From contig JAKMXF010000319.1 of NCBI GenBank assembly GCA_024704765.1, positions 186,001 to 250,000 on the forward strand: 64,000 bases of DNA. Reading direction: 5' to 3'. This stretch comes from Oopsacas minuta. Lineage: Eukaryota; Animalia; Porifera. The notes beneath the pieces are model-generated. The model searched no databases. It was not told the DNA's origin and saw only the letters and a program-made list of their open reading frames with translations. How positions within the stretch are numbered: position 1 is the first letter of the stretch; each line of letters starts with the position of its first letter. The translations under genes were made by a program, and so were the position numbers. Of this stretch, positions 40,638 to 58,734 are shown piece by piece.

Positions 40638-40822
40638 CCCCTTATTTACATCCTAAGAGCATTTGTACCTTTTTCTAGTTTTACTCGTAGAATCCATCAA
40701 TTTACACACCCAGCATAATTCCAAACAATAATTATAATGATTACACTCACACACAATCAAATAGTAGAATAACTATAGACATATTTGTTCATTACTTATT
40801 ACTCAGAGATAACTTAGAATAG

Positions 40823-42211
40823 TCACAGTATAGATTGAAAGAACTTCACATAGTCTGCCTGGGGTATCTTTGCTCGGCTTGCATGTACACTTACAGCTTC
40901 ATCTCCAGGATACATTACACCACGACCAATTTCCATCTTCCCAAGAAGTGGGTCATACTTGCTTTCTCCGTTCAATGCCTTATCAGCCAGTATTTTACCA
41001 AACAGAGGAACAAATTTCATAGCCCAACCAGATGTGTACAGCACAATACGTTTGTCTGTTCCAGTTAGGAAGTCAAGAACAAAGCCAGGGTCCCCAGAGG
41101 AGTTCGTATTTAAGGCAAATCCAGCAACACATGTTGCAATGGTTTCAGTATTTAACTCTGGTTGTAGATCTGGCATGGATTGTCTGACAAAATCTTGGGT
41201 AAATCGAAGAGCATCTTCATCAACAGGTCTCGAATCAATTGGAGGTGGCTTTCCGTAAAAGTTAAAAGTAGATTTAGAGGTGAAACCTGGCGCAACTCTG
41301 CATTTACCGGAATATTCATCCTTATTAGTTGGGAAGCCATAATATGTATTTGCATCTATAGCATCTCCTGGTTCATGGTCCTTTGGAGGGGCAAAATAAA
41401 TCCACACTGGCCAATTTTCGCTTATAGTTTGATTAGGAGAGTCATTATGGAGAGAAAAGTAGTTGGAACACCACAGATAAATTACAATTCCCATTCTTTG
41501 TTCAAATGGAGGGTGCACTGTTTCTAAGAGCTCATTGATGAAGACACTCGGTGTCATGATAACTTTCTTTCCCGAATATACACTTAAATCGCCTGCAGTT
41601 ACTGTAATATGAGAACTTATTGAGTAATCAACTTTTGTTACCTTCGTATTCTCCAATAAGTCACAGTTACTGCTTGCCTTTAACATTTTTAGCAGAGACT
41701 TTATAAGTTCAAGAACATTGATTGAACCACCACCATCCCCAGGCACCAGTAGTGCACTAAAATTTTCGCTATCAGTAACTGCCCCACTGATGAACGGGAA
41801 TTTTTGCCGAATCTCTTCAGGATTTTTGTAATAGCAATAATCTTGACTTAATTCTTTGAGATTTGTTACTGCCTTTTCTATATTACCCTCTGCAGTAGTA
41901 ACAGAACTATCACCAAACCACAATACACCAGTAAACTTCACTAATTTAGGATTGTTAGTTTCGTCGATTAATTCGTGCCACAATCCACGCGTTTCGATTG
42001 CTAACTGACAGAGATAACGTTCTGAATAACAGATTCGCCATTGCCTTGAATACCCTGGACTAGAAGAATAATCGTTATGAAAAGTAAACTGCTCCAAAAG
42101 CAGTACTTTCTTGTTCCTCTTCACAGCACATTCGTAAGCTGCAGCCAATCCAACAGGACCACCTCCCACAATAATCACATCATACAGTTGTGTTGGATCT
42201 TTCGCTGCCAT
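40823..42211 (-). CDS. FAD-dependent oxidase, monomeric sarcosine oxidase / pipecolate oxidase family, intronless, 462 aa
   Basis: YDVIIVGGGPVGLAAAY Rossmann motif, LLEQF, SSSPGYSRQWR (MSOX GSS.G.SR), a Cys in ATCVAG at the likely flavin-attachment position, FVLDF, and GWAMKFVPLFG. Confidence 0.88.
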   Translation of the reverse strand: MAAKDPTQLYDVIIVGGGPVGLAAAYECAVKRNKKVLLLEQFTFHNDYSSSPGYSRQWRICYSERYLCQLAIETRGLWHELIDETNNPKLVKFTGVLWFGDSSVTTAEGNIEKAVTNLKELSQDYCYYKNPEEIRQKFPFISGAVTDSENFSALLVPGDGGGSINVLELIKSLLKMLKASSNCDLLENTKVTKVDYSISSHITVTAGDLSVYSGKKVIMTPSVFINELLETVHPPFEQRMGIVIYLWCSNYFSLHNDSPNQTISENWPVWIYFAPPKDHEPGDAIDANTYYGFPTNKDEYSGKCRVAPGFTSKSTFNFYGKPPPIDSRPVDEDALRFTQDFVRQSMPDLQPELNTETIATCVAGFALNTNSSGDPGFVLDFLTGTDKRIVLYTSGWAMKFVPLFGKILADKALNGESKYDPLLGKMEIGRGVMYPGDEAVSVHASRAKIPQADYVKFFQSIL

Positions 42212-43181
42212 CTAGAAGCTAGTTAACTGCTAATTGGTTGTGGTTTTACAGTTCAACTGGTTTGGGTAAATGTGGTTCAATGTTGGATGTGTCGGAAAAG
42301 ACAGTAGAACTTTGTTAGTACGTACACATTCGAAATTAATACACTTTATCTTATGTACGTATTGAGTGATATTGTAGGGACCTGATTTTACATATATTTT
42401 TCATATTATCCCGACAAGGTTTGTCAAATATCAATATCGGTTAATCACCGATTCTATACGATATATCGGTGCCAAACCTTGATCCGAAAATTCGCATTAG
42501 TGTGTTCGTAACTTAGTAGTAATGAGGTTCTGCTGTAATAAGGAACATAGTAAAATGTACAAGCAAAGAAGCAAAAATATAATTTCTAGATAATTATGTG
42601 AGTTCGGAAGCAGATGAAAAATATATTTTTAGTTAAAGGCCAATTGTTAGGTAGATATGAAAATATGTTCAAAATTCTAAAGCTCACAATAATTTCTTTA
42701 TTTCGAGATAAAGAATGGATATAAACGCCAGAAATTGGTACGAATACAATTGTTGTTCTGGAAAGTATATCTCTTGTTACAAGAGAGTTTGGAAATGCTA
42801 TGTAATATTGTTTGATACAGGTATGACTTCTATTGGTCAACTGCCAATTACTAGAGGCAATGTCAGGAGTCTATAACATGATCAATCCCGTTAGTGTTTC
42901 GAGACACTTTGACTTTTAGCCAACGCTGTTATTATGTAAACGAAGGAACCCAAACTAGAGACATACCTCCGCAATAAGAGATTGAAATATTTAACCTTAA
43001 GTAATGAATTAACACTCATAATTGTTTTAACAGGTTGGTATTCGCAAAACTGCATTACAATAATCAATTGAATCTCCATGATCACAAACTTCCAATTGTT
43101 ATACTTTACTCCAACATATTTGGCACGTATTGAAATATGAAGAAAGAAAGAAATTGAAAGAGAACGCAATGTTAGATTACA

Positions 43182-44116
43182 TCAAAATTTCCTGTTTTTT
43201 ATCAAGAAAGGTTCTCTTGATACTGAACTCGCGCAAGCTTTGATCTTCATTTCGATAGGGTAATGCTCGCTGATTGCAAGCGATTGTGATAAATCTTTTC
43301 CTAAAGCTAAACTGAAATTGTATACGTGTATATCTGTAACTTCTAACGCGATCGACTTATATAAAATCAAATTATCATAAGTACATGAAATGTTGCGATA
43401 TACCGAAGTACTATTCGCGCCTTTTTTTAACCCAAACGAGAACGCAGGATCTGTATTGAAGGAGAGCTTTTGAAAATCTTCATCTGAGAGGTAGCTACAG
43501 TCTGCATTTAGATTCCCCAGGATAATCCCGTCAGTCGTCCCAAATGAAAGTAATCAGAACGAAACGTAAACAAATACAAATCTTGAATTTCATTGAATGT
43601 ATTCTCAGGAGCTGTATGTGTAGCTTGTAGCCAAAACGAATTACAATTTGAGCACTTAGATGGCATGAAAAGTACTGAAAAAGGTGACCTCACGAAACTA
43701 GCCCTATAAGTTGGAAACTGATGGAAATCAAGCACGTCGACTTTGGAGGGCTTATATAGGAAACTGTATTGTTCGGGGTTAACCTTGCCTAATCGAATAC
43801 TAATAACTTGCTTATAACAATCCGCCAAGGGGACAGAAGTATTAAGTGTGCGTAGCAATTTGTTCGTGACATTCTTGACTGAATCATCTGGATCTCTTAA
43901 CCCGATTAGCAAAACAACATCATACCTCTTTATTATTGTTACTATGGACTGTAACACGCTGTTATTTTGAATTCTGCTGCAATCGATACGATCAAAACTA
44001 AATGTAGCTACATTTAGGATGGGACATTCGGCATTGTTTGGCACAAATGGTCCATATTTGAAAGCACACACGTGATAGAATAACGGGAAAACAACTATCA
44101 AAAGTGGTAGGAACAT
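43182..44116 (-). CDS. Secreted DNase I-like protein with one frameshift (G-run at 43539-43541) and substituted metal ligands; gene or pseudogene
   Basis: Signal peptide MFLPLLIVVFPLFYHVCA, then IIKRYDVVLLIGLRD, EQYSFLY, FVRSPF and ATHTAP. After a -1 shift: GIILGNLNADCSYL, CTYDNLI and SEHYPIEM, ending at the stop of ORF 43182-43370. Confidence 0.8.
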
Positions 44117-44656
44117 TATTTCCAATATATCTAGCTAAGGTTATGAATTGACAATAAACACAATAAAATTATATGATTTGCTAGACTAGATAAACGATTA
44201 ACCGAAGACCGTAGAAATGGAGAAATACTGGTATGTATAAGGCACAAATATCCAGTTACGCTAATAAGTATTCAATTAACAACGCCTGCATAAACCGACA
44301 CTCGTTGAGATATGAAACTTGCATCTATTTACCAAATTGTCGGATTTTGCAGATGAATTTGTATTATGAGAAGCTATTCTAGATCAGAAACAATTTCGGG
44401 TTATATACCCTGCCCAGACAATAGTATTCAGTCATTGATGGTCAATCCAGTAAACATTATGATTGAGAGTATGCCTAATGTTAAATCCATTATATCAAAC
44501 ATCTATGCATTTCGAAGAGATTTGAATTCTCTAAAGTCTAAATGGGTTATGGCTTACAATCCCGGACATATTTTGTAATCTCGGGATTTCGTTATTGGTC
44601 GTTTTCTAGAGTTTCGGTATTCTTAGGGCTTAGAAGTATATCGATTTGATACGTTG

Positions 44657-47287
44657 AATTGAGATGCAGGTGTAATCCTATGGTTTTGCTTGTAAGATTG
44701 CAAACCAATCCCATTCTCATACTACAATTAACCGATTACGGTCGAATTGTTACATTCGTACAAAAAGGAAGACTAAAATTATATAACTTCGTTTTAACCA
44801 ATTCGCCCACTCAAATCGAGATTTCAGTACCTTATTGACGTCATTAAATCACACATTTTCCCGGCCGTATTCGGTCATAGACATTTGCTACTAAATTCGG
44901 AATCTCAGGATTGTAAGCTCCAAAAGGAATCTATCAGATCCATAAAATTTATGTATTTCATGGATGTTTCATGAATTTGATTTGAATATTCACATTCAAA
45001 ATGGATATAGATTGGATATGGATCCATAATCGTGTGGGAAATGGATTACGGAGTGTATTTAGATTATAGTTTGTATCCATCCAGTGGTGCCTCTGGTCAT
45101 GAGTTGGAAATATTTGGCATCAGTAAAAAATATCTAAACTGGAAGTCTGTATACTGAGGTTACAATACGCGGAATGCAACTATGACATGGGAGATACGCT
45201 GAAGTTTTACTGTATTGGCCCATCAAAAATAGGGGAGATTATTAGTATTTGTATGGAAACTTTACCATTGCCTGATTACTTTTGTTGAGTAGGGTAGGTC
45301 AACCGGATTATACAGGTGTCTGTTTATGAAGGCCCCATGTACACCAAATAGAAAACGATTAATCATATCATATCACTAAAAATCATTACAAATACCAATA
45401 TATTCAATACAATAGATAACAAATTCCATCTCTAAAAAAGCCTAATCCCAGCACTCAAATGTTTGAACTTAAGTAATGAATTCAAAGCACACACATATAG
45501 TGTTCCTATACACTCACTAGAGCTCACACACGCACCCATTAGAAATCTCCAGATTGCGTGAGATATTCTAAATAAGAATTGGTTTGAGTCAATGACCCAT
45601 CCACCCATTCCTGGACAAGTGAATATGATTCTCCAATAATACCAATGTTAGGCCCTAACACATTGAACATCCCAGGAGAAACTATACTATCATTAGAAAA
45701 TACCTTCCATGCGTGACAAGAATCACCAAAACGCGGTTCTGTCCAGTGAGTGTATGTGGCTAGAACTGGATCAGGAATATTAATGAGTGGTTCCATGGGG
45801 GTCACATCTCTAGGGCTTCCTTTTTTGAAATTGGACCTTTGGAATAATTGCGCTAATTGATCCATGGCAACTACAACAACTTGTTCTTTGGCTAAAACAC
45901 TGTGAAGTGGAACTTTTACATTGTCTTTCGGCTGATAATCCTTACCAATCGATTGCATAGAATGCCAGTAATAACTATTGTCATAGTCACAATAAATAGT
46001 TAACGATCCAGGATCTTCGTATGCCTTCAGTCGTTCTGCAGGTTCTTTGATCGGATTAAATATATACACTGTACCAAGCTTTAAATCCGTATAATTCGGA
46101 CCACTATCAATTCCCAATATGGACCACCATTGCTTTTCAAAATACAAATTGATTTTTGTAAGGGATTCAGAGATTACGGAATCGACATATGGTGAAAATT
46201 TAGTGTCTGCCATCCATTCGTTACTTGAAGGTAAAGTTTGCAAGGCTAATTTGGGTAAAGCAAGTACACATCTTTTGGATCTGATAGTTTTTGCTGTGAT
46301 TTATTCGGATCATTTCTGTCAATATATTCAATACGAATTGGAAAACTTTGGCCAACATCTTCATCAAGTTTCACTAACTCAGATAGTAAATTGACTTTTA
46401 CTCCATTGTTTGTGATTTTTTGGCAAAGCCTTTTTGGTATTTCATCATAACCATATTTAAGAGTAAAAAAATTGGGGCTTGAGGTGAAGTCAAGGTTGGA
46501 TTGGAATCCGAATCCAGCATTTGCATTACGATTGAATAAACTTTTGAATCCAAGTGATATCTCAATCATTTTGATCGTTTCATAGGAAAGACCCATAAAA
46601 CGCAGTAGAGACCCAAAATCCCATTTATATAATTCGATATTGTCAACCTTCCATTCTAATCTAACATGTTGCCATTGTTGTGGAGTAAATGGTTGTTCTC
46701 CTGGTGGATCCTGCATCATGCGAATTTTATCGAATACATCATTTAGTATAGCGAATGGATCCGCATAATTCTCTTGCTCTGCTGCACTCAAGCCGGTGTT
46801 ATACAAGTCAAACCACACTTTAGATTCATCAGCTTGGCCAAGTGTAAAGCGAACACCTCTAATGAAGTTCAAATTATATTTGTTTCCCATTGAGAAAGGA
46901 ACAATTTCTTTCTCCAATCCTAATTCTATAGCTAATTTATAGGTCTCCCTATTGTTGTAAAAGCGCATTCCACCTTCTTCTTGTTTGATGGTTTTCCCAT
47001 TGATTGTTACAAGATTACTTTCCAACAGCCCACCAATGCGGTCCAGTTTTTCTATAATACATATGGTCTTTTTGGGATATTTCTCGTTTAATTTGTATGC
47101 GCAATAGAGTCCAGAAACTCCTGCGCCTGCAATTAGGATGTCATAGGTTTGTTCTGCAGTTGCCATTTTTCTCCGTTATAATGTCACGATCAGTTACTAA
47201 ACAAGAAGATAGTCTTTACTCATATTTTGAGTTGTTAATTATTTCTTGAATAAATCACTTATTAATGATCTTTAGTACTAAAGGTTA
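44657..47287. repeat. Left arm of ~2.63 kb inverted duplication
   Basis: Reverse complement matches 56103-58734 over coding and both non-coding flanks. Confidence 0.93.
45539..47166 (-). CDS. Flavin amine oxidase / L-amino-acid-oxidase-like, copy 1 (542 aa after repairing one homopolymer deletion at ~46290)
   Basis: YDILIAGAGVSGLYCAY, EKLDRIGGLLES, EEGGMRF, LKYGYDEIPKRL, SESLTKINLYFEKQWW, GPNYTDL, and GESYSLVQEWVDGSL. ORFs 46246-47166 and 45539-46243 join with +1 nt (1629 nt). Confidence 0.85.
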
Positions 47288-47659
47288 ATTACTCATAGAG
47301 TAATTAGTAATTATCTATAGGCAGGGCTGCAGTGGGTATCGGAATTCCCATGGGTGACTTATTTGCTATATTCCCGACATCTATATGAATATTCAACACA
47401 CTTATTCGGATAAAATGAACAGTTTGTGAAATATCATAATTATCATGACCAGGCCCGGTGGAAGCTCGAGAGAGGTGGGGCAGCCTTGAATTGTGATGAT
47501 CGCAGAGTAAATAAAGTTAATTTAATGGGATCGAGAACCCATCTAATATACATTACGAGAACAACTCCCCTAGAGATTACATTTGTTCTCAATGCAAAAT
47601 CAAAGTTGAGCTTAAGTTTTGGCAGTTCAAACTAAGTGATCAAATAAATATATCTAATT

Positions 47660-48340
47660 CTGTAATCTATATAATATAATCTCAATTGTTGTCTGTCTGT
47701 TTATTTGTTTGTTTGTTTGTTGTTGTTTGTTGTCTGTTGTCAAGGAAAAGATTTACGATATGCAATTTTGAAATTGTCGCATAACTATGTATTATCGTGT
47801 TAACCAAGGAAGTAAATAGAATTCAAATAAAACTCAACTCATGCTGAATCCGATTTTCACACTTTTGGATGGGTCATAATTAAATTTATTGTTGTATTTA
47901 GGAATATAAAGTAAACAAATTTCAAAATTAAGGTACAAGTAGAATCATACTTTCAACGGCTATGCTGGGGTAATCGAGTGTGCTGAGTCTGAATATGGCA
48001 TTGTAAACAAAATCTATAATATTAACTCTTAATTGTTGTTTGTTTGTTTGTTTGTTTGTCCGTTGATATGTAAATATATTGTTGTTTTATGAATATACAG
48101 GAAACAAATTAGCAAAACTCAAAATTACATAGATATTTGCTTTCAACGGCTACAAAAGGGGTTGATCTTACAAAATATTTCAATAATATATGTGCCATAA
48201 TCGCATATTTGTGAATTACGTTGTTGTGAATATATCAATATTATAATACTCAAAGGGCCCGTCAATTTGGAGAATAATGGACACCTCGAGGCGTAATGCG
48301 GGGAGTTCATCGCGAAGCGACGAGCCAAAGGCTCGTAGTA
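47660..48340 (+). mobile_element. Helitron-like non-autonomous element(s) with (GTTT)n microsatellite
   Basis: Start AATCTATATAA..CTCAATTGTTG followed by GTTT repeats, occurring twice (47660, 48010). GC hairpin ACGAGCC-AAA-GGCTCGT before AGT at ~48320. Related pieces at 18660-18925, 58965-59030 and 62700-62885. Confidence 0.5.
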
Positions 48341-50307
48341 ATTTACAACAAAATTGTAATTATACTATAGAAGATCCTCCGGCTTGAACTCGGTGCCAAA
48401 CATATTACTCAAATATCAAACACTCAATTATATCATAAGATGACAAAATATTATCGCGAACCATGCACGCGAAATGTATATACCAAAAGATTTACATAAA
48501 AAGTGGGGCGGCTCAGGCCGTCCCAGCCGCCCCGGCTCTGCCGGCCCTGATCATGACTATTTAGTGCATTGCATTGTTTGCAAGATGGCTACGCTACAAT
48601 CAATTGTACATGCAATTGACAACGCTGCTAAAGTCAAAGATAATTATTACAGAATGAAATTTTCAATAAATACGCTTTAGCGTATTTGCTTTCCTGAATG
48701 AGCGCTGGGGGCTAGAAAATTGCTCCAAAACTAAAATTTAATCTCCTAGAAGAAGATTTTGGCTGAAATTTACGTCACATTTGACCAATCAGGATAATTA
48801 GTCCCCCAAAACATTTTATTTTGTATCTTTGAAAATTGAAAAATTGTTTGGAAGAAATATTCCGACGAAAAGAATAAGCCTGGGCACTTATTCAATGAAA
48901 ACGGAAAATAGTATTTTAGGAAAATTCTCATGCGTTTCTAATGTTAGGGTAAATTCAATTCGTTGATAATAATAATTTTGGATTTACTTATTTCTACCTG
49001 TAATATTTGATCGCTGATTAGAAATGTAATAGCCATTTTATACAAGAAAACAGCAATAGGTTGCAATAATTACTAAAAATGCATAGAATATTTTAAGCAG
49101 ACGCCTGAGAGGCTGCTAATACGAATGCGAAGCATTTTTCTGAATCTGCGCAGATCAAGCAAGCGAAGCGTATTTATGTAAAATGAATATAAAAGATAGA
49201 TATAAACTTACAGTGAGTGTGTTTAAGACAGTCAATGTTGTGTGCGTGTGTTTCAATGTTGGATTGAGATGTTGACAGTTTATAGTATAGTAATGCATTC
49301 AAAGTATCTTGAAATTTATACTTAACTTGGTAGGTGGGTTAAGCTTAAGAGTCTATCTATACACTGATATTAAGTATTAGCTGTATTTGTTAATGCTTAA
49401 TGCATATAATGAAAAGTGGATTTGCCTGGCTTGGACAAGCTGGAATACCTTCCTAAGCGAATTTATATGTCACCCTTAGGGTATCCTGGATTATCACGGG
49501 ATATATTACTTCATATCCAGAGTTGAGTTTCTGAAGTAACCTATAACTGCAGGTATAAGGACATGTTATTCGGAAACACAAATGTTAGGACTCACTTTCG
49601 TTCCTAACTGAAGTCACGCAAATGATGAGTACACGTTTCGTATAAGGAACACCATTATTATGAACCACAGGCTGAGATTTGGCAAAAATTAAGGAACTCT
49701 TAAGAAGTGCGTACATACAGGGGCGCCCGCAAGCATACTCACTATACGCAGGTGCGTATAGTAAATGTCTCTAATATTTTTCCTGTACCGACTATACTAT
49801 AGTACATTGCAGTGTGTTTCTCGACCTTTTCGAACTGCTACATAATTATTTTATTAATAAATTTCAAGACACACCTTTCAAGGTGGCATTCAATCAGCGT
49901 AACCGGTGTGAGAATGTACTACAATTATATGTAGTAAATTAGTACTTTGATATCCAGAGGTGAAGCTAAGCCCCTTGAAAGTACATTAAACAAAATTCTA
50001 TTATGCCAGTGACATTTTGGTGGCAACTCAAAGGCGATGCCACAACTGGGAGCAATAGGATGGCAGGAATCATTTCTAGTGGGGCACAAAAATTTTTCGG
50101 AATACAGACTGGCTATTATGTGTGGCGGTGAAATTGGAATAGTATGTAATTTAAGCGAATTATTATTCATTTTGGCTACTGGAACTGAAACCAAATCAGA
50201 AAGTAAACCGGAACTATGACGTAAGCAAAAATGTATATTTTTGATAGTTATCAATTTTGGATAAATAACTGTTTATTGTCATAATTATTGTATAGAAAAT
50301 TCATTTA

Positions 50308-50408
50308 CAGTAGAGTCTCGTTAATACGAACACGGTTAAGGAGTAACTGCAAATAAGGAGTATGAATTTTGGCAGTCCACTGGTGTATGTATTAACGAGA
50401 GTCTACTG
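50308..50408. mobile_element. TA-flanked MITE
   Basis: TIRs CAGTAGAGTCTCGTTAATAC / GTATTAACGAGAGTCTACTG, with TA on both sides. Confidence 0.8.
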
Positions 50409-50834
50409 TAGTCACCATCTGTTCCCTTTGAGATAATTATTCATATTTTCTGCCGGTGAGGGCTGTTTTGATTTCAAATTATGGATTACTTTTCAGGCCG
50501 CTTGTGCTAAAAATTATTATAAGGTGGATATTGTACATCTAAGGCTCCCGAACAAAATTAGGATGGGAACGACTGCCTATGGCCACATTTTCGATTCCAA
50601 CTTGCATATTAAAAGCGGCTGTCTGCACTTCGCCTGTAAATTATCCAAGGGCTAACATTTCAAATCTCATCGAATCAACTTTTAATCACCAAATTCGTAC
50701 TTAGCGTCAAATTGCTTTTCTAGATTGATTTTCTTGATATTTCTTTCATACTCAACATGAATACACAATACTATCGTCTGTTTCGTTATTAATGCATGCT
50801 ACATATAAAATTAATTCTTTCATCGTAGACACAA

Positions 50835-50990
50835 TCTGTTATGCCATCGGTCATTTGTATAAAGAAATGCTTAGGTAGACCTTATCCTGTTATCCTATCA
50901 GTCATTTGTATAAATGCTTAGGTAGACCGTATCTGTTATCCTATTGGTAACTTGTATAAATGCTTAGGTAGACCTTATCTGTTATGCTAA
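50835..50990 (+). repeat. ~45 bp tandem repeat, about 3.5 units
   Basis: Units of the form CTGTTATCCTATCAGTCATTTGTATAAATGCTTAGGTAGACCTTAT; the motif also occurs at ~55590 and, as a hairpin, at 58769-58809. Confidence 0.8.
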
Positions 50991-52757
50991 CGTTCATTAT
51001 TATCTGTTTGCAAATATTTACATAGATGGTACTAGCATTGATATGATATGTTGCCCTTAACGGCATTACCTTGTTGTCACATAATATCATACTTGTAATC
51101 TCCAACAAGTTTATGATAACTATAACAGGAAAAAATTTCTAATTATATTGGACATATAATAGCACTCAATGTTCCATAGTTTTTATGGAAGATTAGCCAA
51201 TAAATGTGTGCTTAGCTTAACTCCAATATATATTGATCCGATTTGGAGTAGGTTTAATCAAACGTTGCATGTAAAGTAAACAAATAGCTGATATCTCGAA
51301 ATATACTTAGAGACTTACTCTCAACAGACATATAGGGTAATCAAGCACGCTGAATCGGAATATGATATTTCAATACTACGTGCCTAGTATTGATCTCATT
51401 CCCGTTGCAATAGCTGATTAAATATTTCAGTACTGAGCTGGTAAAGTTTATACATTTATCGTATATACTCTACATGCCAACCTGAGTGAAGAAACCACGG
51501 GACGGAGGTACTAATATAGCTCCGCTCCACCTTCCACTCCTGAATCATAAATGGAACGTGCTCCTTTAATGCTCTGTAATATATCGGGACATCGCTGGAC
51601 GCAGCATATTTGCTACAAAAATGCAAATATGGTGCTAAAATTCGGGGCAATAATGATTTGACAAATTCGGAAACAATATGATTATTTGGTTGTAATTTCT
51701 TCACTTCCTACTGTTAATAATCGTAACATTTCAAGATGTTCATTATCTTGAGAAGAAGTTATTGAAAACGTTTGGTTAACTAGAGAATACTCCAAATGTC
51801 CATCACACCTAAATCTCTCTTTCTATCATCTGGGTAACTTACTCATCAGTTTTTATGAGTGTGATAACATTGCAGTTTGGTATCTCGGCAGTAGAGTACT
51901 ACGATATTACACATTTCCAGATTATCGTGTTGAATATGAATCCCGTGGGTTAGCAGTGAGTGAGAATTTTCAGATTACTATGCATAGCTGTATACTATAA
52001 TGTTATTAGGATATACGAGCCTAATAATTGTGTGTATTTTGAATAATTACTTTTCATATATCTTAACATATACGAGTAATGTTTATTATATCCCACTTAC
52101 TATCTGATAACAATGATATAATAAACATTGAACAACTTATTATGTCAGACTTGCTCGCAGCAACATTGGCGGTCCTATCACTAAAATTGGGGGAACAAAA
52201 CTGGAGAGTGGTATGTGTTGGGTCCTGAACACATAATATATTGATTGTACAGTTAAACATGTTGAGGCCAAGGTATAACTATGGGGCAGCAATGAACCCT
52301 TTGCCATCTCGCCTAAAGGCGCTAAATGCTACTTGTTATACTTCATATTGAGTGAACTTGATTGAATTGGATTTGTTGAATTCACAGAAATCCTACATTT
52401 TATTGGACTGTCATAATTACAGCGGTGCTTATTGATAGCAAAGTCGACTTCGCGTATTAAAAGATGCGTAGAAAAATAGCATTCTATACTATTATAGAAA
52501 TTTTATAGAATATAAAGATGGAGGACGATCTGTGGCTGCCATATATGACTCGCCTTACCATTTCAGACGGCAGACCAAATATAGCGTGACTAAACCAGCT
52601 ACAGTAGATACAGCAGTAGAAAAGTTTATATAAGGATCTACACCATAGTAGAATTTATTTCTCGATAGTATTCTTATATTGAGTATACACTGTAATTCAG
52701 TTTTAATCTTCAATTTCCTTCTTTACACACTATTATAACTCATTGCTTGTAACAATA

Positions 52758-53717
52758 ATGGCAAGTGTAGGTTGTGTTATTGCGCCACCAACCGAGACCC
52801 AACCGCCGGATTTCGATAGTCCTTTGATCATAGAACCAAAACAGCCTCAGAATGTGCTAACGTTGGGTAATTTGGCTCCACTTGTTGGCACCTGGGTTAA
52901 CGCGCCTAACACATTTGGGTACAATGTGATGCCACTACCTCAAATGTATGATGAGACAGGAGGTGTAATGGTACCTTCGTACATCCTGAAGAATAATCAA
53001 TATTATGAAGAGATGACGTTTTCAGCAATCAACGGTGTAGCTCCTAATCGCGGTGGTCAAGGTACTCAGGTTTGCAATACGCTGTTTTATGAACAGCGAG
53101 TTTATCTTAGTGAAAATCCTGATCAAAATAAATTACTGCATGCAGAAAACGGGTCTTGGCTGAATTTCACTAGTAGGGAACAATTTCTTGGGCCATATGG
53201 ACAGACACCTCTTCCCAATAGTACCCCTCCAGTTTTACTATATCAAATTGGGAAGCAAATGTCAGTGCCTCATGGTAACTCTATTCTAGCTGTTGGTACG
53301 TCTAGTATTGATAAAAGTGGCCGACAGCCTGATATTCCCGATATTCCATTGATTAAACCACAAGGTGTTAATACATCTCAATACGATGATCAATCAGTAG
53401 GGAATCCGAATGTAACATATACATCAAATCCAAATCTAGTCATACAGCAGGGTCTAACAGGAGAAAAGATCGCTGAATACATCAAACTTGAAGTTGATTC
53501 AAAACCAGTAGCTCCGCCAACAAACATTGGATTCGAGCAAAAGTTTTCAAAAGTAACCAGCTACAAGCAAACTGTGTGGATTATAGCTAGTAAAGATCTT
53601 GGGCAGTTTGACCGTTTACTATACTCGCAGACAATTGGGTTACAATTGATAATCAATGGTACTAAAGTGGAATTCCCTCATGTTACTTCGAATGCGCTAG
53701 TTCGGAAAACTTTCTAA
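52758..53717 (+). CDS. Heme-binding / FMP-type peroxidase-like protein, intronless, 319 aa from first ATG
   Basis: Motif order LGNLAPLVGTW, GYNVMPLP, YYEEMTFSAI.G.APNRG, LFYEQRV, LHAENGSWL, SVPHGNSILAVG, W....D...LLYSQTI.L and FPHVT.N.L.K. I recognise this order from a mainly bacterial heme-binding protein family; not confirmed by search. Confidence 0.7.
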   Translation: MASVGCVIAPPTETQPPDFDSPLIIEPKQPQNVLTLGNLAPLVGTWVNAPNTFGYNVMPLPQMYDETGGVMVPSYILKNNQYYEEMTFSAINGVAPNRGGQGTQVCNTLFYEQRVYLSENPDQNKLLHAENGSWLNFTSREQFLGPYGQTPLPNSTPPVLLYQIGKQMSVPHGNSILAVGTSSIDKSGRQPDIPDIPLIKPQGVNTSQYDDQSVGNPNVTYTSNPNLVIQQGLTGEKIAEYIKLEVDSKPVAPPTNIGFEQKFSKVTSYKQTVWIIASKDLGQFDRLLYSQTIGLQLIINGTKVEFPHVTSNALVRKTF

Positions 53718-56102
53718 CTTGGTATTTCCTTTCTTTCTTTCTTTCTTACTATTCCCATTACTAGTTTACTATCCCCCATATATCTTTAGATGTTAAACTT
53801 TCCTTTTTTGCTGTATTTGTGAGTAGATTGAGTTATTATCTTGTGTGTTAAATTCCTGACTTACACATGTGTTGGCGGTCGATATTGTCTGAAAAATGTT
53901 GGATCAGATCATATTCCTAGATTAGAGAAAGGTCACATTTTCTGAGGGGATAACGTTCTTAATATTACAATATCGCTTAGAAATTCGGTCACCGAAATAT
54001 ACATAATGAAATAGCCCGTAAACTACGTTTTCTATAATCATAATATTTTCATAGTGGTTACTTAATTAACAGTGTAGAGGTAATTATTTGCTATCATAGG
54101 TTGCAATATATACGTAATAATCTTTTTCAGCATGAATTCAATTTTGTTTGGGAACACAAAGAGTTCTCACTAGCACCTTTGGCCCTTACAGTACAAGAGG
54201 TAACCCCTGGAATATAATTTATAACTCGTAACTTCACTTCAAATACTGTGAAATTCGCATTCAGCTTTTCCTCGGAAATATCGTTAAAATATCAGAATAT
54301 TTATTGTGTCAAACCTTGTATACATAAATTGGTAAATACGAACATAGTCAGCACAAACAGTTTTCCCCTTAAGCCTTATTAGCCACATTCATCCGGCCTC
54401 ATTGCTCGTTTTATCGACCCAGAATTCTCTAAATGCGGAAATTCTGCTTGGAGATTGCGATACTTTTTTGCCAGAAAATGAAACAAAGATACACTAAGGA
54501 ATTGAAAATGTAAAATTTATCAAGAATTGGCTTGGAATGTGGTATATACATTCGATATAATATGAGAAACCAGTCCTTCATCTCGGAAAATCGAGTTTTC
54601 TAATTAGATGGCTGAAAGGAAATGTATCTTCATTTAGATTGGCTGCGATTTGAATCGACCGGCCGTTGACATGCGAGTTGGCTTTATTCTACTCACGTTT
54701 AATTATACAATCAGGTATTAGTAGACATATGACTCATTGATTGATCTTCTATAATTTTCAATCGTAATTGTTGTCTGTATGTTTGTCTTACTTTGTAAAA
54801 ATATCTGGTGGCTATGCCACCAAACCACCCGATTTGTCAAGCACTCAACACGCACAAAACTCCTGTTTTAGCGTTATTGAAAATAACAAGCCAGAGGAAT
54901 ACATTTATAATCGAAGGATGGAAATCGTTAGGGATCGAAACTTTAAATTTGAATGTGTATATGGTCTGGTATAAGAACATTTTCTAGATTATAGCCGAAA
55001 TCTTCGAAACTCTCTGAGATGGTGTTAAGATATTTTGAGCCATCAGAATTGATGTTTTCTAAATATCTATAAGATTGGCCTCTGGGATATTCAGAGTTAA
55101 TGGTGTCCAAAGACTCTTATGTATTCAAATGGTAATGCTTAATTTGTTATTTCGATCAGTGCGATTTAAGAGTCAGGAATTTCCTCTACACAGTAGTTGG
55201 GAATTTGGTCAACGGTTCTCATTAAAGTTGTAAATAGACCAAATGATACTAGGGAGACGTATGAATATTTCGAGAAATTGTAAGCTTTATGTATTTCAAA
55301 GAAGACAGAAGCTCTATTGTATTTTGGTTGATATATCTTCATGATTTACTGGGATGAGAATGAATTGTATACCGAGAAATGGATCTTTACAAATGTTTCA
55401 GGAATTTACAATTCAGGGGAAGATCGATTGCACTACCACCCACTAGTGGAAGAATTCATTAAGTTATGTGTGGGCTTGAGTCTATATGTCGTGTATGACC
55501 TATTGAACAGCAAATTAATTAACTTAATATCCTAATATTTAGTTACAAAACGCCCATAAGTGATAAAGTTCAACTATACGTACTTAATCTAAATGCTTGG
55601 GTAGACAATATCTGTTATGTCATCGGTCATTTTGATCATTTGCAAATAATGTGCACGGGTCGTACCGCCACATTTTCAATGTATATTTTCTTCAATCTCA
55701 CAATATTTCTGGAATATGGGATTTTCTGCATTATTACATAGTGCATTATTCTTCTATTTTTAGCATTTTATAGCTTTATGGAAAACAATCAATATAGTAC
55801 TAATGTGTGCGTATTGAATTATCAATTTATAATTACGTAACCCATCGAAATAATATTGTGTAACCTTCTTTTCCAATTATCTGTTATTAGAACCCGATTT
55901 GTGTATACGTGTCTTTCACACTCTGTTTCAAAATTATATGCGGATTCAATTTTGCAGTATAATCTAAAATCTATGTACTGCGATATACTGCTAATATCAG
56001 GGGCGTAGGGCCCCAAACAAAGGAGGGGCTCCATAACTTCAGCTCCGAAGAGTTTTTTCGTAAATTCTTCCGACTTAGCTAATGATAATAAAGAATATAA
56101 GC

Positions 56103-58734
56103 TAAACCTTTAGTGCCAAAGATCACTAATAAGTGATTACTCAAGAAATAATTAACAACTTAAAATATGAGTAAAGACTATCTTCTTGTTTAGTAACTGA
56201 TCGTGACATTATAACGGAGAAAAATGGCAACTGCAGAACAAACCTATGACATCCTAATTGCAGGCGCAGGAGTTTCTGGACTCTATTGCGCATACAAATT
56301 AAACGAGAAATATCCCAAAAAGACCATATGTATTATAGAAAAACTGGACCGCATTGGTGGGCTGTTGGAGAGTAATCTTGTAACAATCAATGGGAAAACC
56401 ATCAAACAAGAAGAAGGTGGAATGCGCTTTTACAAAACTAGTGAGATCTATAAATTAGCTATAGAATTAGGATTGGAGAAAGAAATTGTTCCTTTCTCAA
56501 TGGGAAACAAATATAATTTGAACTTCATTAGAGGTGTTCGCTTTACACTTGGTCAAGCTGTTGAATCAAAAGTGTGGTTTGACTTGTATAATACGGGTTT
56601 GAGTGTAAAAGAGAAAGACAAATATACGGATCCATTCGCTATACTAAATGATGTATTCGATAAATTCGCATGATGCAGGACCCACAAGAAGAAGCACCAT
56701 TTACTCCACAACAATGGCAACATGTTAGATTAGAATGGAAGGTTGACAATATCGAATTATATAAATGGGATTTTGCGTCTATACTGCGTTTTATGGGTCT
56801 TTCCTATGAAACGATCAAAATGATTGAGATATCACTTGGATTCAAAAGTTTATCCAATCGTAATATAAATGCTGGATTCGGATTCCAATCCAACCTTGAC
56901 TTCACCTCAAACCCCGAGTTTTATACTCTTAAATATGGTTATGATGAAATACCAAAAAGGCTTTGCAAAAGAATCACAAACAATGGAGTAAAAGTCAATT
57001 TACTATCTGAGTTAGTGAAACTTGATGAAGATGTTGGCCAAAGTTTTCCAATTCGTATTGAATATATTGACAGAAATGATCCGAATAAATCACAGCAAAA
57101 AACTATCAGATGCAAAAGATGTGTACTGGCTTTACCCAAATTAGCCTTGCAAACTTTACCTTCAAGTAACGAATGGATGGCAGACACTAAATTTTCACGG
57201 TATGTCGATTCCGTAATCTCTGAATCCCTTACAAAAATCAATTTGTATTTTGAAAAGCAATGGTGGTCCATATTGGGAATTGATAGTGGTCCGAATTATA
57301 CGGATTTACAGCTTGGTAGCGTGTACATATTTACTCCGATCAGAGAACCTACAGAACGAGGGAAGGCATACGAAGATCCTGGATCGTTAACTATTTATTG
57401 TGACTATGACAATAGTTATTACTGGCAATCTATGCAATCGATTGGTAAGGATTATCAGCCGAAAGACAATGTAAAAGTTTCACTTCACAGTGTTTTAGCC
57501 AAAGAACAAGTTGTTGTAGTTGCCATGGATCAATTAGCGCAATTATTCCAAAGGTCCAATTTCAAAAAAGGAAGCCCTAGAGATGTGACCCCATGGAACC
57601 ACTCATTAATATTCCTGATCCAGTTCTAGCCACATACACTCACTGGACAGAACCGCGTTTTGGTGATTCTTGTCACGCATGGAAGGTATTTTCTAATGAT
57701 AGTATAGTTTCTCCTGGGATGTTCAATGTGTTAGGGCCTAACATTGGTATTATTGGAGAATCATATTCACTTGTCCAGTCCTGGGTGGATGGGTCATTGA
57801 CTCATACTAATTCTTATTTAGAATATATCACGCAATCTGGAGATTTCTAATGGGTGCGTGTGTGAGCTCTTAGTGAGTGTATAGGAACACTATATGTGTG
57901 TGCTTTGAATTCATTACTTAAGTTCAAACATTTCAGTGTTAGTGTTACGCTTGTTTAGAGATGGAATTTGTTATCTATTGTATTGAATATATTGGTATTT
58001 GTAATGATTTTTAGTGATATGATTTGATTAATCGTTTTCTATTTGGTGTACATGGGGCCTTCATAAACAGACACCTGTATAATCCGGTTGACCTACCCTA
58101 CTCAACAAAAGTAATCAGGCAATGGTAAAGTTTCCATACAAATACTAATAATCTCCCCTATTTTTGATGGGCCAATACAGTAAAACTTCAGAGTATCTCC
58201 CATGTCATAGTTGCATTCTTCGTATTGTAACCTCAGTATACAGACTTCCAGTTTAGATATTTTTTACTGATGCTAAATATTTCCAACTCATGACCAGAGG
58301 CACCACTGGATGGATACAAACTATAATCTAAATACACTCCGTAATCCATTTCCCACACGATTATGGATCCATATCCAATCTATATCCATTTTGAATGCGA
58401 ATATTCAAATCAAATTCATGAAACATCCATGAAATACATAAATTTTATGGATCTGATAGATTCCTTTTGGAGCTTACAATCCTGAGATTCCGAATTTAGT
58501 AGCAAATGTCTATGACCGAATACGGCCGGGAAAATGTGTGATTTAATGACGTCAATAAGGTACTGAAATCTCGATTTGAGTGTACGAATTGGTTGAAACG
58601 AAGTTATATAATTTTAGTCTTCCTTTTTGTTACAAATGCAACAATTCGACCGTAATTGGTTAATTGTAGTATGAGAATGGGATTGGTTTGCAATCTTACA
58701 AGCAAAACCATAGGATTACACGTGCATCTCAATT
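56103..58734. repeat. Right arm of ~2.63 kb inverted duplication
   Basis: Reverse complement of 44657-47287. Confidence 0.93.
56224..57850 (+). CDS. Flavin amine oxidase / L-amino-acid-oxidase-like, copy 2 (542 aa after repairing two homopolymer deletions at ~56663 and ~57590)
   Basis: ORFs 56224-56673, 56670-57629 and 57593-57850 together are colinear with copy 1; 1627+2 = 1629 nt. Confidence 0.85.

What the first reader, a model, noticed from the sequence alone, without database searches (positions are those of the whole stretch)
40823..57850. Candidate oxidase-peroxidase gene cluster: three intronless flavin oxidases around a heme-peroxidase-like gene in an animal genome
Seen: within 17 kb lie a sarcosine-oxidase-like gene, two amine/L-amino-acid oxidase paralogs and an FMP-type heme protein. 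All are intronless and lack an obvious signal peptide or SKL-type C-terminus (ends QSIL, SGDF, RKTF), while the flanking kinase and whirlin-like genes have introns. Established: MSOX-family and LAAO-family enzymes release H2O2, and heme peroxidases consume it. Inference: this may be a coupled H2O2-generating and H2O2-using module for antimicrobial defence, detoxification or small-molecule modification, possibly built from bacterial genes. I know of no described animal cluster with this make-up.
Basis: partly seen in the sequence, partly recalled or inferred. Interest (0 to 1): 0.78.

Follow-up and report, generated by a model that had tools for sequence, protein, structure and literature searches.

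The report
Sponge amino-acid oxidase and heme cluster
A glass sponge keeps an amino-acid oxidase next to two partner genes: a heme protein of bacterial origin that sits beside such oxidases in bacterial operons, and a second flavin oxidase that is fused to such oxidases in other organisms. The cluster therefore looks like a real working unit, though its chemistry is untested.

Summary
The window is Oopsacas minuta (glass sponge), contig C319.

- **The 'sarcosine oxidase':** it is intact (462 aa) and closest to NikD, the enzyme that turns piperideine-2-carboxylate into picolinate.
- **The two amine oxidases:** they are inverted duplicates, 96% identical, of the Pl-LAAO/AncLAAO type. The assembly breaks them with three homopolymer frameshifts. 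Read contigs contradict one of these.
- **The 'heme peroxidase':** it is an FMP-family heme-binding protein with a nitrobindin fold. It passes NF040572 but fails the FMP-peroxidase model.
- **A fifth gene:** a DNase I-like gene lies inside the cluster.

New evidence:
- The FMP family is almost wholly bacterial. In 13 of 80 bacterial FMP loci, a homologue of the sponge oxidase lies next to FMP; in 16, a GMC oxidase lies within 5 kb.
- Oxidase followed by NikD-like gene is adjacent twice in another sponge-like assembly. A different oxidase type lies beside the NikD-like gene in an octocoral. The two are fused in a choanoflagellate and in bacteria.
- FMP has a very high word depth in an RNA-like run.

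Functional coupling is therefore well supported. Peroxidase chemistry, the substrates and co-transfer of oxidase and FMP remain inferred. FMP is unlinked in the other assembly.

Other first-stage readers of this scan had flagged FMP and the duplicates on this same stretch.

The parts
40823..42211 (-). NikD-like MSOX-family flavin amine oxidase, intact single exon, 462 aa
   Evidence: It hits Pfam DAO at 87 bits. TIGR01377 gives only 108 bits against a cut-off of 480. The best solved relative is NikD at E 1.5e-41, against MSOX at 2e-15. NikD Cys321, Trp355, Lys358, Arg53, Glu101 and Tyr258 align to identical residues; Asp276 aligns to Gly. Relatives at 44-50% identity occur in sponge-like contigs and octocorals.
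43508..44125 (-). First exon of a DNase I-like gene with a hydrophobic, signal-peptide-like N-terminus. It is an ordinary animal gene lying inside the cluster.
   Evidence: It matches DNase I chains at E 6e-14 over residues 37-185. It is co-duplicated with the oxidase on contigs C339 and C177.
45539..47166 (-). L-amino-acid oxidase copy A (Pl-LAAO/AncLAAO type). It is read as 306 aa plus 234 aa because of one frameshift in an A-run near 46292.
   Evidence: ORFs are listed. It hits Amino_oxidase and NAD_binding_8. The alignment with copy B and the C339 copy shows a 1-base gap private to A. It is 60-69% identical to the intact relative P0242, which matches the 653-aa amine oxidoreductase 7og2 and AncLAAO 7c4k at E about 1e-61.
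52758..53717 (+). FMP-family heme-binding protein with a nitrobindin-type beta-barrel, intact single exon, 319 aa
   Evidence: NF040572 scores 211 bits (cut-off 150); NF040571 scores 68 bits (cut-off 300). The AlphaFold model has pLDDT 88. Its best folds are nitrobindins, TM by target 0.6-0.7. Three histidines invariant across 30 sequences (H128, H172, H308) are kept. Word depth in RNA-like run X4 is 82,000-205,000, against 0-9 in the flank.
56224..57850 (+). L-amino-acid oxidase copy B. It is read as 149, 319 and 85 aa because of frameshifts near 56662 (A-run) and behind 57588 (C-run).
   Evidence: ORFs are and the alignment. B-specific contigs of runs X2 and X3 carry an extra C behind 57588. 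X4 word depth over the gene is 25-175.
44657..47253 (.). Left arm of the inverted duplication that carries copy A and its flanks
   Evidence: Inverted repeats I1-I6 are 95-98% complementary. blastn gives 96% over 1889 nt.
56137..58734 (.). Right arm of the inverted duplication that carries copy B and its flanks
   Evidence: A third copy at 94-96% identity lies on contig C339.

Best explanation
[quoted passage not shown] Two genes that recur as this oxidase family's partners elsewhere sit beside it.

**Partner 1: the heme protein.** It is an FMP-family, nitrobindin-fold heme-binding protein that entered the glass-sponge lineage from bacteria. In bacteria, the same family lies in operons directly beside homologues of this oxidase, or near a GMC flavin oxidase.

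**Partner 2: the NikD-like oxidase.** It is an MSOX-family oxidase with a covalent-FAD cysteine. The same pairing occurs as neighbouring genes in another sponge-like assembly and in an octocoral, and as one fused protein in a choanoflagellate and in bacteria.

**Most likely working.**
1. The amino-acid oxidase converts an L-amino acid to its imino/2-oxo acid plus ammonia and H2O2.
2. The NikD-like enzyme oxidises that product further when it is a cyclic imine, as NikD does with piperideine-2-carboxylate. This releases more H2O2.
3. The abundant heme protein consumes or uses the peroxide in the same compartment.

**Shown:** family memberships, the fold, gene order, synteny and fusions, the bacterial affinity of FMP, and strong representation of FMP in an RNA-like run.

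**Inferred:** substrates, H2O2 handling by the heme protein, and co-transfer of oxidase and heme protein as a pair.
For: **Organism and locus.** LOD99 names from Oopsacas minuta appear among the hits. The genome has 365 contigs and 61.46 Mb, matching PMC10280926. Flanking genes are animal genes. GC3 of the cluster genes is 0.32-0.33, against 0.28-0.33 for host genes.

**FMP.**
- It passes NF040572 and has a nitrobindin fold.
- All named relatives are bacterial, at 41-49% identity. The Atlas clusters are 85-100% bacterial.
- The two sponge-type sequences are sisters inside bacterial sequences, SH-aLRT 94. They share a deletion.

**Oxidase beside FMP in bacteria.**
- 13 of 80 loci carry an oxidase homologue at E 1e-50 to 1e-70. 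Eleven are on the same strand with gaps of -34 to 377 nt.
- The best-scoring one (L036) has the order FMP then oxidase, as for FMP and copy B here.
- A GMC oxidase lies within 5 kb in 16 loci. Together, 26 of 80 loci have one or the other.

**Oxidase family.** Pl-LAAO, a 653-aa broad-range, H2O2-forming enzyme without a signal peptide, is described in PMC6316408. Its equation with the 653-aa PDB chain 7og2 is inferred from length alone.

**Oxidase beside the NikD-like gene.**
- The two are adjacent on the same strand twice in assembly ERZ25071281.
- An intron-free NikD-like gene lies 1.7 kb from an Amino_oxidase gene in Dendronephthya.
- DAO plus Amino_oxidase fusions P0295, P0332 and P0363 (Diaphanoeca) match both sponge proteins.

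**NikD likeness.** NikD chemistry is described in PMC4021061.

**Expression.**
Against: - No activity has been measured for any of the proteins.
- FMP fails the FMP-peroxidase equivalog model. Known nitrobindins bind NO and isomerise peroxynitrite rather than act as peroxidases (PMC6275384).
- In ERZ25071281 the FMP gene is on another contig, with no oxidase within 10 kb. The closest oxidase relative, P0242, has neither partner within 10 kb.
- The sponge oxidase clade is sister to a Variovorax oxidase that is not FMP-linked. It lies next to, not inside, the FMP-linked bacterial clade. Co-transfer is therefore not shown.
- The oxidase copies carry frameshifts in the assembly. dN/dS between A and B is 0.94, so one or more copies may be decaying.
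- The copy of the cluster on C339 has a broken NikD-like gene and a stop in its oxidase.
- The octocoral partner oxidase and the fusion P0230 belong to a different Amino_oxidase subfamily.
- Contig word depth is a poor measure of expression (the tool's own caveat).
Confidence: 0.6

Rival explanations
1. The cluster is a small biosynthetic pathway rather than a peroxide system. The amino-acid oxidase makes piperideine-2-carboxylate from lysine (or a similar cyclic imine). The NikD-like enzyme aromatises it to picolinate or a related heteroaromatic acid. The heme protein carries out a further oxidative step on the product, much as heme partners act on the products of tryptophan oxidases in bisindole pathways.
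For: - NikD is by far the closest solved relative, and the residues aligned with NikD Cys321, Trp355, Lys358 and Arg53 are identical.
- NikD converts P2C, made from lysine, to picolinic acid (PMC4021061).
- Solved L-lysine oxidases are among the oxidase's relatives, at E 6e-31.
- The oxidase and NikD-like genes are fused or adjacent in distant lineages.
- Some bacterial oxidase-FMP operons also hold an indolepyruvate-decarboxylase-like ThDP enzyme and a PF12902 protein. That pattern looks metabolic.
Against: - The substrate is unknown. The characterised relative Pl-LAAO has a broad range and prefers Gln and Leu (PMC6316408).
- NikD Asp276 is not conserved.
- No NikD-like gene lies in the bacterial FMP loci.
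- No downstream enzyme, such as a methyltransferase or ligase, was found in the window.
- The roles of the NikD residues are recalled from memory, not tested here.
Confidence: 0.2
2. There is no functional coupling. The stretch is a hotspot of segmental duplication where unrelated single-exon genes lie together by chance, and the duplicated oxidase copies are decaying pseudogenes.
For: - Three frameshifts occur in the two copies.
- dN/dS is 0.94 between A and B.
- A rearranged third copy on C339 has a truncated NikD-like gene and an in-frame TGA.
- An unrelated DNase I-like gene sits inside the cluster.
- FMP is unlinked in another assembly.
Against: - Both pairings recur independently in bacteria, a choanoflagellate, an octocoral and another sponge-like assembly.
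- One frameshift is contradicted by reads. All three are in homopolymers of a PacBio/Illumina hybrid assembly (PMC10280926).
- Neither copy has a stop in the shared reading frame.
- Oxidase sequence is present in the RNA-like run.
Confidence: 0.12
3. The heme protein works on its own as an abundant nitrobindin-like NO, peroxynitrite or heme-buffering protein. Its position between the oxidase copies has no functional meaning in the sponge.
For: - It has a nitrobindin fold.
- Nitrobindins are known to detoxify peroxynitrite (PMC6275384).
- Its word depth is far above that of the neighbouring oxidase.
- It is unlinked from the oxidases in ERZ25071281.
- 54 of 80 bacterial loci have neither a LAAO-type nor a GMC oxidase nearby.
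Against: It lies beside flavin oxidases in 26 of 80 bacterial loci. The sponge has kept the same neighbour, in the same FMP-then-oxidase orientation as the best-matching bacterial locus.
Confidence: 0.15
4. The bacterial-looking genes are contamination or a misassembly of symbiont DNA.
For: The nearest relatives of FMP are bacterial. The sponge sample held a microbiome (PMC10280926).
Against: - The genes lie in the interior of a 365-kb contig among animal genes.
- GC and GC3 match the host, against 65% GC in the closest bacterial locus.
- DNA-like runs cover genes and spacers evenly and without a break.
- A 55%-identical copy lies in a 1.2-Mb AT-rich contig of another assembly.
Confidence: 0.01

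Closest known systems
Pl-LAAO of Pseudoalteromonas luteoviolacea and the AncLAAO family (PDB 7c4k; the 653-aa chain 7og2 is probably Pl-LAAO, judged by length only)
   Same: Both are FAD amine-oxidase-fold enzymes of similar size without a signal peptide. The intact sponge-type relative P0242 matches the solved chains at E about 1e-61. Pl-LAAO makes H2O2 and lies in an operon with an indolepyruvate decarboxylase (PMC6316408), as does the oxidase in locus L050.
   Different: Identity to bacterial members is only about 30-37%. The sponge genes are about 540 codons long, against 653 aa. They lie in an animal genome, are multi-copy, and are frameshifted in the assembly. Their substrate range is unknown.
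NikD of Streptomyces tendae (nikkomycin pathway; PDB 2q6u, 2oln, 3hzl)
   Same: Both are MSOX-family proteins. The match runs along the full length at E 1.5e-41. The covalent-flavin Cys321 and Trp355, Lys358, Arg53, Glu101 and Tyr258 align to identical residues.
   Different: The sponge protein is about 65 residues longer, with insertions. Asp276 is replaced by Gly. The upstream enzyme would be an oxidase rather than the aminotransferase NikC. No nikkomycin genes are present. The activity is untested.
DAO plus amine-oxidase fusion proteins: P0295 (a Thermoanaerobaculia MAG), P0332, and P0363 (the choanoflagellate Diaphanoeca grandis). NCBI names the octocoral NikD-like proteins after the Dictyostelium 'putative bifunctional amine oxidase DDB_G0291301'.
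   Same: The same two domains occur. The N-terminal half is 30-33% identical to the sponge NikD-like protein, and the C-terminal half is 24-31% identical to the sponge-type oxidases P0242 and P0243.
   Different: Those are one polypeptide with DAO first. In the sponge they are separate genes with the oxidase upstream. The oxidase halves of the fusions fall in a different clade of the family. The Dictyostelium protein itself was not examined here.
Nitrobindins (Arabidopsis At1g79260, M. tuberculosis Rv2717c, human THAP4 C-terminal domain)
   Same: They share the beta-barrel fold, TM by target 0.6-0.7. There is a weak THAP4_heme-bd Pfam hit. An invariant histidine (H308) lies near the C-terminus; I recall the nitrobindin proximal histidine lying there, but did not test this.
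   Different: The sponge protein is about twice the size, with a large insertion. It has no sequence match to any solved chain. It belongs to a separate, almost purely bacterial family, NF040572.
Tryptophan oxidase plus heme partner pairs of bisindole pathways (VioA/VioB, RebO/RebD, StaO/StaD); from my own knowledge
   Same: An amine-oxidase-fold L-amino-acid oxidase is encoded next to a heme protein that acts on its product. VioA is the best NCBIfam hit of the bacterial FMP-linked oxidases. PF12902, the commonest bacterial neighbour of FMP, also gave a weak, local hit to the VioB model (E 7e-5) for one sponge PF12902 protein.
   Different: FMP shows no detectable similarity to VioB. The VioA scores are far below cut-off. 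No bisindole genes are present.

Membership tests
MSOX/NikD family (Pfam DAO PF01266; monomeric sarcosine-oxidase-like) | DAO-family FAD domain covering the whole protein, with an N-terminal GxGxxG motif | tested here: met
   PF01266 scores 87 bits over residues 11-410. The sequence VIIVGGGPVGL is visible.
MSOX/NikD family (Pfam DAO PF01266; monomeric sarcosine-oxidase-like) | Cysteine that carries the covalently bound flavin (NikD Cys321, MSOX Cys315) | tested here: met
   In the phmmer alignment, the query 'ATCVA' aligns with the NikD 'STCLA' at residue 321. The covalent link itself is not testable here.
Monomeric sarcosine oxidase proper (TIGR01377) or N-methyltryptophan oxidase (NF008425) | Score above the curated cut-off | tested here: not met
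   TIGR01377 scores 108.5 bits against 479.65. NF008425 scores 104 against 257. The gene is therefore not filed as a sarcosine oxidase.
NikD-type P2C oxidase | Closer to NikD than to MSOX, with the NikD tryptophan over the flavin (Trp355) and Lys358 | tested here: met
   E is 1.5e-41 for NikD against 2e-15 for MSOX. 'GWAMKF' aligns with the NikD 'GWAFKF'. The roles of these residues are recalled from the literature, not tested.
NikD-type P2C oxidase | Four-electron oxidation of piperideine-2-carboxylate to picolinate | not testable with these tools
   This needs an enzyme assay. NikD Asp276 is Gly here.
Pl-LAAO/AncLAAO-type L-amino-acid oxidase (Pfam Amino_oxidase PF01593) | Amino_oxidase domain above cut-off, with an FAD-binding N-terminus | tested here: met
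   The pieces score 30-35 bits against a cut-off of 19.8, plus NAD_binding_8.
Pl-LAAO/AncLAAO-type L-amino-acid oxidase (Pfam Amino_oxidase PF01593) | Full-length similarity to characterised members | tested here: met
   P0242, 60-69% identical to the window pieces, matches 7og2 and 7c4k at E about 1e-61 and L-Lys oxidase 7eih at 6e-31. The window copies were searched only in pieces.
Pl-LAAO/AncLAAO-type L-amino-acid oxidase (Pfam Amino_oxidase PF01593) | Uninterrupted reading frame | tested here: inconclusive
   There are three homopolymer frameshifts in the assembly. The one behind 57588 is contradicted by B-specific read contigs. The other two could not be checked. No stops occur in the shared frame of A or B.
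FMP-family heme-binding protein (NCBIfam NF040572) | Score above the curated cut-off over the whole model | tested here: met
   It scores 211.3 bits against 150, over model positions 1-272 of 273. All 63 columns invariant in a 30-sequence alignment are kept, including three histidines.
Peroxidase, FMP-type (NCBIfam NF040571, equivalog) | Score above the curated cut-off | tested here: not met
   It scores 68.3 bits against 300. It is therefore not filed as a peroxidase, although peroxide handling remains a working hypothesis.
Nitrobindin superfamily | Heme-holding beta-barrel fold | tested here: met
   The model has pLDDT 87.8. Foldseek gives probability 1.00 and TM by target 0.56-0.71 to Rv2717c, At1g79260 and THAP4. 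Heme binding itself is not testable here.
Gene of bacterial origin fixed in an animal genome (horizontal transfer) | Nearest relatives are bacterial, and the animal sequences form one clade inside them | tested here: met
   For FMP. For the oxidase it is weaker. The nearest clusters that could be named include a bacterial one (Variovorax). The sponge clade is monophyletic on a long branch, with sister support of only 81.
Gene of bacterial origin fixed in an animal genome (horizontal transfer) | Physically joined to host genes, host-like composition, and transcribed | tested here: met
   The kind of run X4 is inferred from its depth profile, not from its record.
Conserved bacterial operon pair (LAAO-type oxidase with FMP) | Adjacent, co-oriented genes in several bacterial lineages | tested here: met
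   13 of 80 loci have the pair. They come from Flavobacteriia (Aquimarina), Rhodobacterales, Wenzhouxiangellaceae, Alcanivoracaceae and Verrucomicrobiales.

The most novel reading that the evidence does not exclude
An animal has kept two partners of a bacterial operon side by side after horizontal transfer: a Pl-LAAO-type oxidase and its FMP heme protein. It has wired them to an older eukaryotic partner, a NikD-like oxidase. The result is a three-enzyme cytosolic pathway that turns lysine or another amino acid into a picolinate-type heteroaromatic acid, such as a precursor of the marine metabolite homarine, while the heme protein removes or uses the peroxide. This would be an animal metabolic gene cluster with a bacterial operon core. 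It would also give the first functional assignment for the FMP heme-protein family.
Probability: 0.12. Interest if true: 0.85.

Novelty: new variant of a known kind. Interest (0 to 1): 0.68.

Why it matters
- **Rarity.** Functionally linked gene clusters are rare in animals. Cases where a bacterial operon partnership survives as linked genes after transfer to an animal are rarer still.
- **Convergent evidence.** Three comparative signals point to one working unit: bacterial operon neighbours, conserved adjacency in sponge and coral, and fused proteins in a choanoflagellate and in bacteria.
- **A lead for an unstudied family.** I found no experimental study of the large bacterial FMP heme-protein family. 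Its members sit beside H2O2-forming flavin oxidases in a third of the sampled loci, which gives a concrete, testable function.
- **A lead for NikD-like enzymes.** The widespread eukaryotic NikD-like enzymes also gain a candidate role, downstream of an amino-acid oxidase.
- **Sponge biology.** An apparently very abundant heme protein of bacterial origin in a glass sponge bears on peroxide handling, defence against microbes, or small-molecule synthesis.

Tried and rejected
- **Contamination or misassembly:** rejected.
- **'Heme peroxidase':** the protein fails NF040571 and matches no solved chain by sequence.
- **Bacterial origin of the NikD-like gene:** rejected. Its relatives are eukaryotic, and none lies in 80 bacterial FMP loci.
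- **P0230 as a direct Rosetta stone:** its oxidase half is only remotely like the sponge oxidase. P0295, P0332 and P0363 serve better.
- **N-terminus of P0259 as an FMP fusion:** no similarity.
- **FMP near the bacterial DAO-oxidase fusion P0295, or near the Variovorax oxidase:** none found.
- **Sponge GMC genes beyond the window as homologues of the FMP-linked bacterial GMC:** no match.
- **A sponge copy of the operon's ThDP decarboxylase:** only a marginal hit.
- **Sponge PF12902 genes as operon partners:** they are unlinked, and only 28% identical over 150 residues to the FMP-linked bacterial PF12902 protein.
- **The 400-nt similarity between the 3' flanks of the NikD-like gene and the oxidase:** part of it is a dispersed 120-nt repeat.
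- **Literature:** a search for 'FMP-type' with 'peroxidase' found nothing. The genome paper mentions neither horizontal transfer nor amino-acid oxidases.
- **Handling of the broken oxidase copies:** they were searched only in pieces.

Full report
**Where this is.**
The window is contig C319:186001-250000 of a 61.46-Mb, 365-contig genome. Protein hits carry Oopsacas minuta LOD99 locus tags. The figures match the published genome of this glass sponge: 365 scaffolds, about 61 Mb, 36% G+C, a PacBio plus Illumina hybrid assembly polished with Pilon (PMC10280926). The window holds ordinary animal genes, including a mitochondrial processing peptidase in several exons, tandem TRAF-like genes, MFS transporters, and a protein kinase split by an intron.

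**The observation.**
All four genes are at the stated places.
- 40823-42211(-) is an intact 462-aa DAO/MSOX-family ORF.
- 52758-53717(+) is an intact 319-aa ORF. It passes NCBIfam NF040572 'heme_bind_FMP' (211 bits, cut-off 150). It fails NF040571 'peroxidase, FMP-type' (68 bits, cut-off 300).
- The two amine-oxidase genes, 45539-47166(-) and 56224-57850(+), are not open in the assembly. Copy A reads as 306 + 234 aa, and copy B as 149 + 319 + 85 aa.

A three-way alignment with a third copy on contig C339 shows that each break is a single-base difference in a homopolymer, private to one copy. The breaks are an A-run near 46292 in A, an A-run near 56662 in B, and a C-run behind 57588 in B.

Read contigs from two DNA-like runs match B at every site that distinguishes it from A and from C339. 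These contigs carry the missing C exactly behind 57588. That break is therefore an assembly error or one allele. Neither A nor B has a stop in the shared frame.

The two copies are the arms of an inverted duplication, 44657-47253 and 56137-58734, at 95-98% identity, with the heme gene in the unique middle. A fifth gene lies between copy A and the MSOX-like gene. It is DNase I-like and its N-terminus is hydrophobic and looks like a signal peptide. Lack of introns means little here, since several plain animal genes in the window are also long single ORFs. I searched the broken copies only in pieces and made no joined protein.

**What the proteins are.**
- *The 'sarcosine oxidase'.* It is far below the cut-offs for sarcosine oxidase and N-methyltryptophan oxidase. 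Its closest solved relative is NikD at E 1.5e-41, against 2e-15 for MSOX. NikD Cys321 (covalent flavin), Trp355, Lys358, Arg53, Glu101 and Tyr258 align to identical residues, while Asp276 aligns to Gly. The roles of these residues are from my memory of the NikD literature. NikD converts piperideine-2-carboxylate, made from lysine, to picolinic acid (PMC4021061). Relatives at 44-50% identity come from large AT-rich eukaryote-type contigs and from octocorals. Fungal and bacterial hits are at about 30%. This is a eukaryotic family, not a recent bacterial import.
- *The amine oxidase.* It belongs to the family of the solved 653-aa amine oxidoreductase 7og2 and AncLAAO 7c4k. An intact 61%-identical relative, P0242, matches these at E about 1e-61, and matches an FAD L-lysine oxidase at 6e-31. 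Pl-LAAO of Pseudoalteromonas luteoviolacea is also 653 aa, so 7og2 is probably that protein, though I judged this by length only. Pl-LAAO is a broad-range, H2O2-forming flavoenzyme without a signal peptide, encoded beside an indolepyruvate decarboxylase (PMC6316408). An exhaustive search found only 54 representative clusters at E 1e-30 or better among 1.84 billion proteins. In a FastTree tree the seven sponge-type sequences form one long-stemmed clade. Its sister is a Variovorax enzyme (support 81), and it lies next to a bacterial clade that holds all FMP-linked oxidases.
- *The heme protein.* The model is confident (pLDDT 88) and folds as a nitrobindin-type barrel (TM by target 0.6-0.7), with a large insertion. 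It has no sequence match to any solved chain. It keeps all 63 invariant columns of a 30-sequence alignment, including three histidines. Its named relatives are all bacterial, at 41-49% identity, and the Atlas clusters are 85-100% bacterial. The one exception is a 55%-identical copy on a 1.2-Mb, 36%-GC contig of assembly ERZ25071281. The two group together inside bacterial sequences (SH-aLRT 94, quick tree) and share a deletion. GC3 of all cluster genes matches that of host genes. This is an old transfer from bacteria into the glass-sponge line, not contamination.

**Evidence that the genes belong together.**
I fetched 80 bacterial loci that encode FMP relatives.
- In 13 of them, a homologue of the sponge oxidase (E 1e-50 to 1e-70) lies next to FMP. 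Eleven are on the same strand with gaps of -34 to 377 nt.
- These loci come from Aquimarina (8), Ascidiaceihabitans, Pseudosulfitobacter, Wenzhouxiangellaceae, Alcanivoracaceae and a Verrucomicrobiales MAG.
- The best-scoring bacterial oxidase (L036) follows FMP, the same order and strand relation as FMP and copy B in the sponge.
- In 16 loci a GMC flavin oxidase lies within 5 kb. In all, 26 of 80 loci have one or the other.
- The commonest neighbour is a PF12902 ferritin-like protein, directly downstream.
- One locus reads oxidase, then ThDP decarboxylase, then FMP, then PF12902.
- No NikD-like gene occurs in these loci.

Separately, the oxidase and the NikD-like enzyme recur as a pair.
- In ERZ25071281 a 550-aa oxidase is followed about 900 nt later, on the same strand, by a 464-aa NikD-like gene. 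This happens twice on one contig.
- In the octocoral Dendronephthya gigantea an intron-free NikD-like gene lies 1.7 kb from an Amino_oxidase gene of another subfamily.
- Fused DAO-Amino_oxidase proteins exist in a Thermoanaerobaculia MAG, in an unnamed cluster, and in the choanoflagellate Diaphanoeca grandis. Both halves match the sponge proteins.
- In the window the order is oxidase A, then DNase I-like, then NikD-like, all on the minus strand.

**Expression.**
Three runs cover the 5.2-kb test stretch evenly, like DNA. A fourth run, X4, whose kind is not on record, shows word depths of 82,000-205,000 over the FMP gene. Depth is 0-9 in the spacer and 25-175 over copy B. This fits RNA with FMP among the most abundant transcripts. 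The tool warns that contig depth is a poor measure of expression, and cross-laying from the other oxidase copies is possible.

**Evidence against, and limits.**
- FMP is on a different contig from the oxidase pairs in ERZ25071281. The closest oxidase relative has neither partner within 10 kb.
- dN/dS between A and B is 0.94, with amino-acid changes in patches. It is 0.70 and 0.44 against the C339 copy.
- The C339 duplicate has a truncated NikD-like gene and a TGA in its oxidase.
- Co-transfer of oxidase and FMP is plausible but not shown.
- No activity is known for any FMP-family member that I could find.

**Reading.**
The cluster is real and is most likely a working unit built around an L-amino-acid oxidase. 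The heme protein is the partner it has in bacteria. The NikD-like enzyme is the partner it has in eukaryotes and in fusion proteins. The simplest mechanism has three steps:
1. The oxidase makes an imino/2-oxo acid and H2O2.
2. The NikD-like enzyme oxidises cyclic imine products further.
3. The heme protein consumes or uses the peroxide in the cytosol, since no gene in the trio shows a signal peptide or PTS1-type end.

I put this at about 0.6. A true biosynthetic route (lysine to P2C to picolinate-type acids) is a narrower version, at about 0.2 taken as an alternative emphasis. An independent role for FMP is about 0.15, chance clustering with decaying copies about 0.12, and contamination about 0.01. 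These are overlapping readings and are not meant to sum to one.

**Novelty.**
Each family is known. Oxidase plus heme-partner pairs are known in bacteria (VioA/VioB and similar; my own knowledge). Horizontal transfers into this sponge have been noted elsewhere in this scan. I found no description of this combination in an animal, of the operon link between FMP and flavin oxidases, or of the conserved oxidase-NikD-like pairing.

Noticed in passing
window 43508-44125 (-): This is the first exon of a DNase I-like gene with a hydrophobic, signal-peptide-like N-terminus (E 6e-14 to DNase I chains). It lies between oxidase copy A and the NikD-like gene. It is duplicated together with the oxidase on contigs C339 and C177.
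   Followed up: partly
beyond the window end: L015 4457-7072 (-) and L017 1239-3813 (-), i.e. C319:254457-257072 and 261239-263813: Two tandem GMC-oxidoreductase genes (GMC_oxred_C hits) are each split into two ORFs, as by an intron. They add two more flavin oxidase-family genes within 22 kb of the cluster. They show no similarity to the GMC oxidases that neighbour FMP in bacteria.
   Followed up: partly
G000:C339:140089-151252 (L026/L027): A rearranged segmental duplicate of window 40645-47313, at about 96% identity. It holds a NikD-like pseudogene (N-terminus and residues 260-328 missing, with stops), a DNase I-like copy, and a third oxidase copy with an in-frame TGA and a 3-base deletion.
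   Followed up: partly
G000:C177:719811-721412 (-): An intact, more distant oxidase paralogue (LOD99_1958, 550 aa, 57% identical) also lies beside a DNase I-like sequence. No NikD-like or FMP gene lies within 10 kb.
   Followed up: partly
G000:C15:12811-15720 (+) and G000:C335:85979-88948 (-) (L114 4811-7720, L115 2979-5948): Two unlinked single-exon genes of 969 and 989 aa have an N-terminal PF12902 ferritin-like domain, sponge-like GC, and a weak local hit to VioB. PF12902 is the commonest neighbour of FMP in bacteria, but these are only 28% identical over 150 residues to such a neighbour.
   Followed up: partly
bacterial loci L032-L111: FMP is followed directly by a PF12902 ferritin-like protein in 33 loci by phmmer (a cluster of 54 by BLAST). 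Some Aquimarina loci read oxidase, FMP, GMC oxidase, PF12902, with a divergent tyrosinase. Pseudosulfitobacter reads oxidase, ThDP decarboxylase, FMP, PF12902. This looks like an undescribed bacterial oxidative gene cassette.
   Followed up: partly
window 40538-40656 and at least 40 other places in the genome: A dispersed repeat of about 120 nt, 76-86% identical between copies, lies in the 3' flank of the NikD-like gene. The wider 400-nt flank is shared only with the 3' flanks of the oxidase copies.
   Followed up: partly
window 23793-25217 (-) and 26188-27567 (-): Tandem pair of TRAF-like single-ORF genes of 474 and 459 aa.
   Followed up: no
L002 14192-16948 (Rhodobacter MAG): In the closest named bacterial FMP locus, a LodA/LodB-type quinone lysine-oxidase pair lies 5 kb downstream, and a P450 and an acetyltransferase lie directly after FMP.
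   Followed up: no
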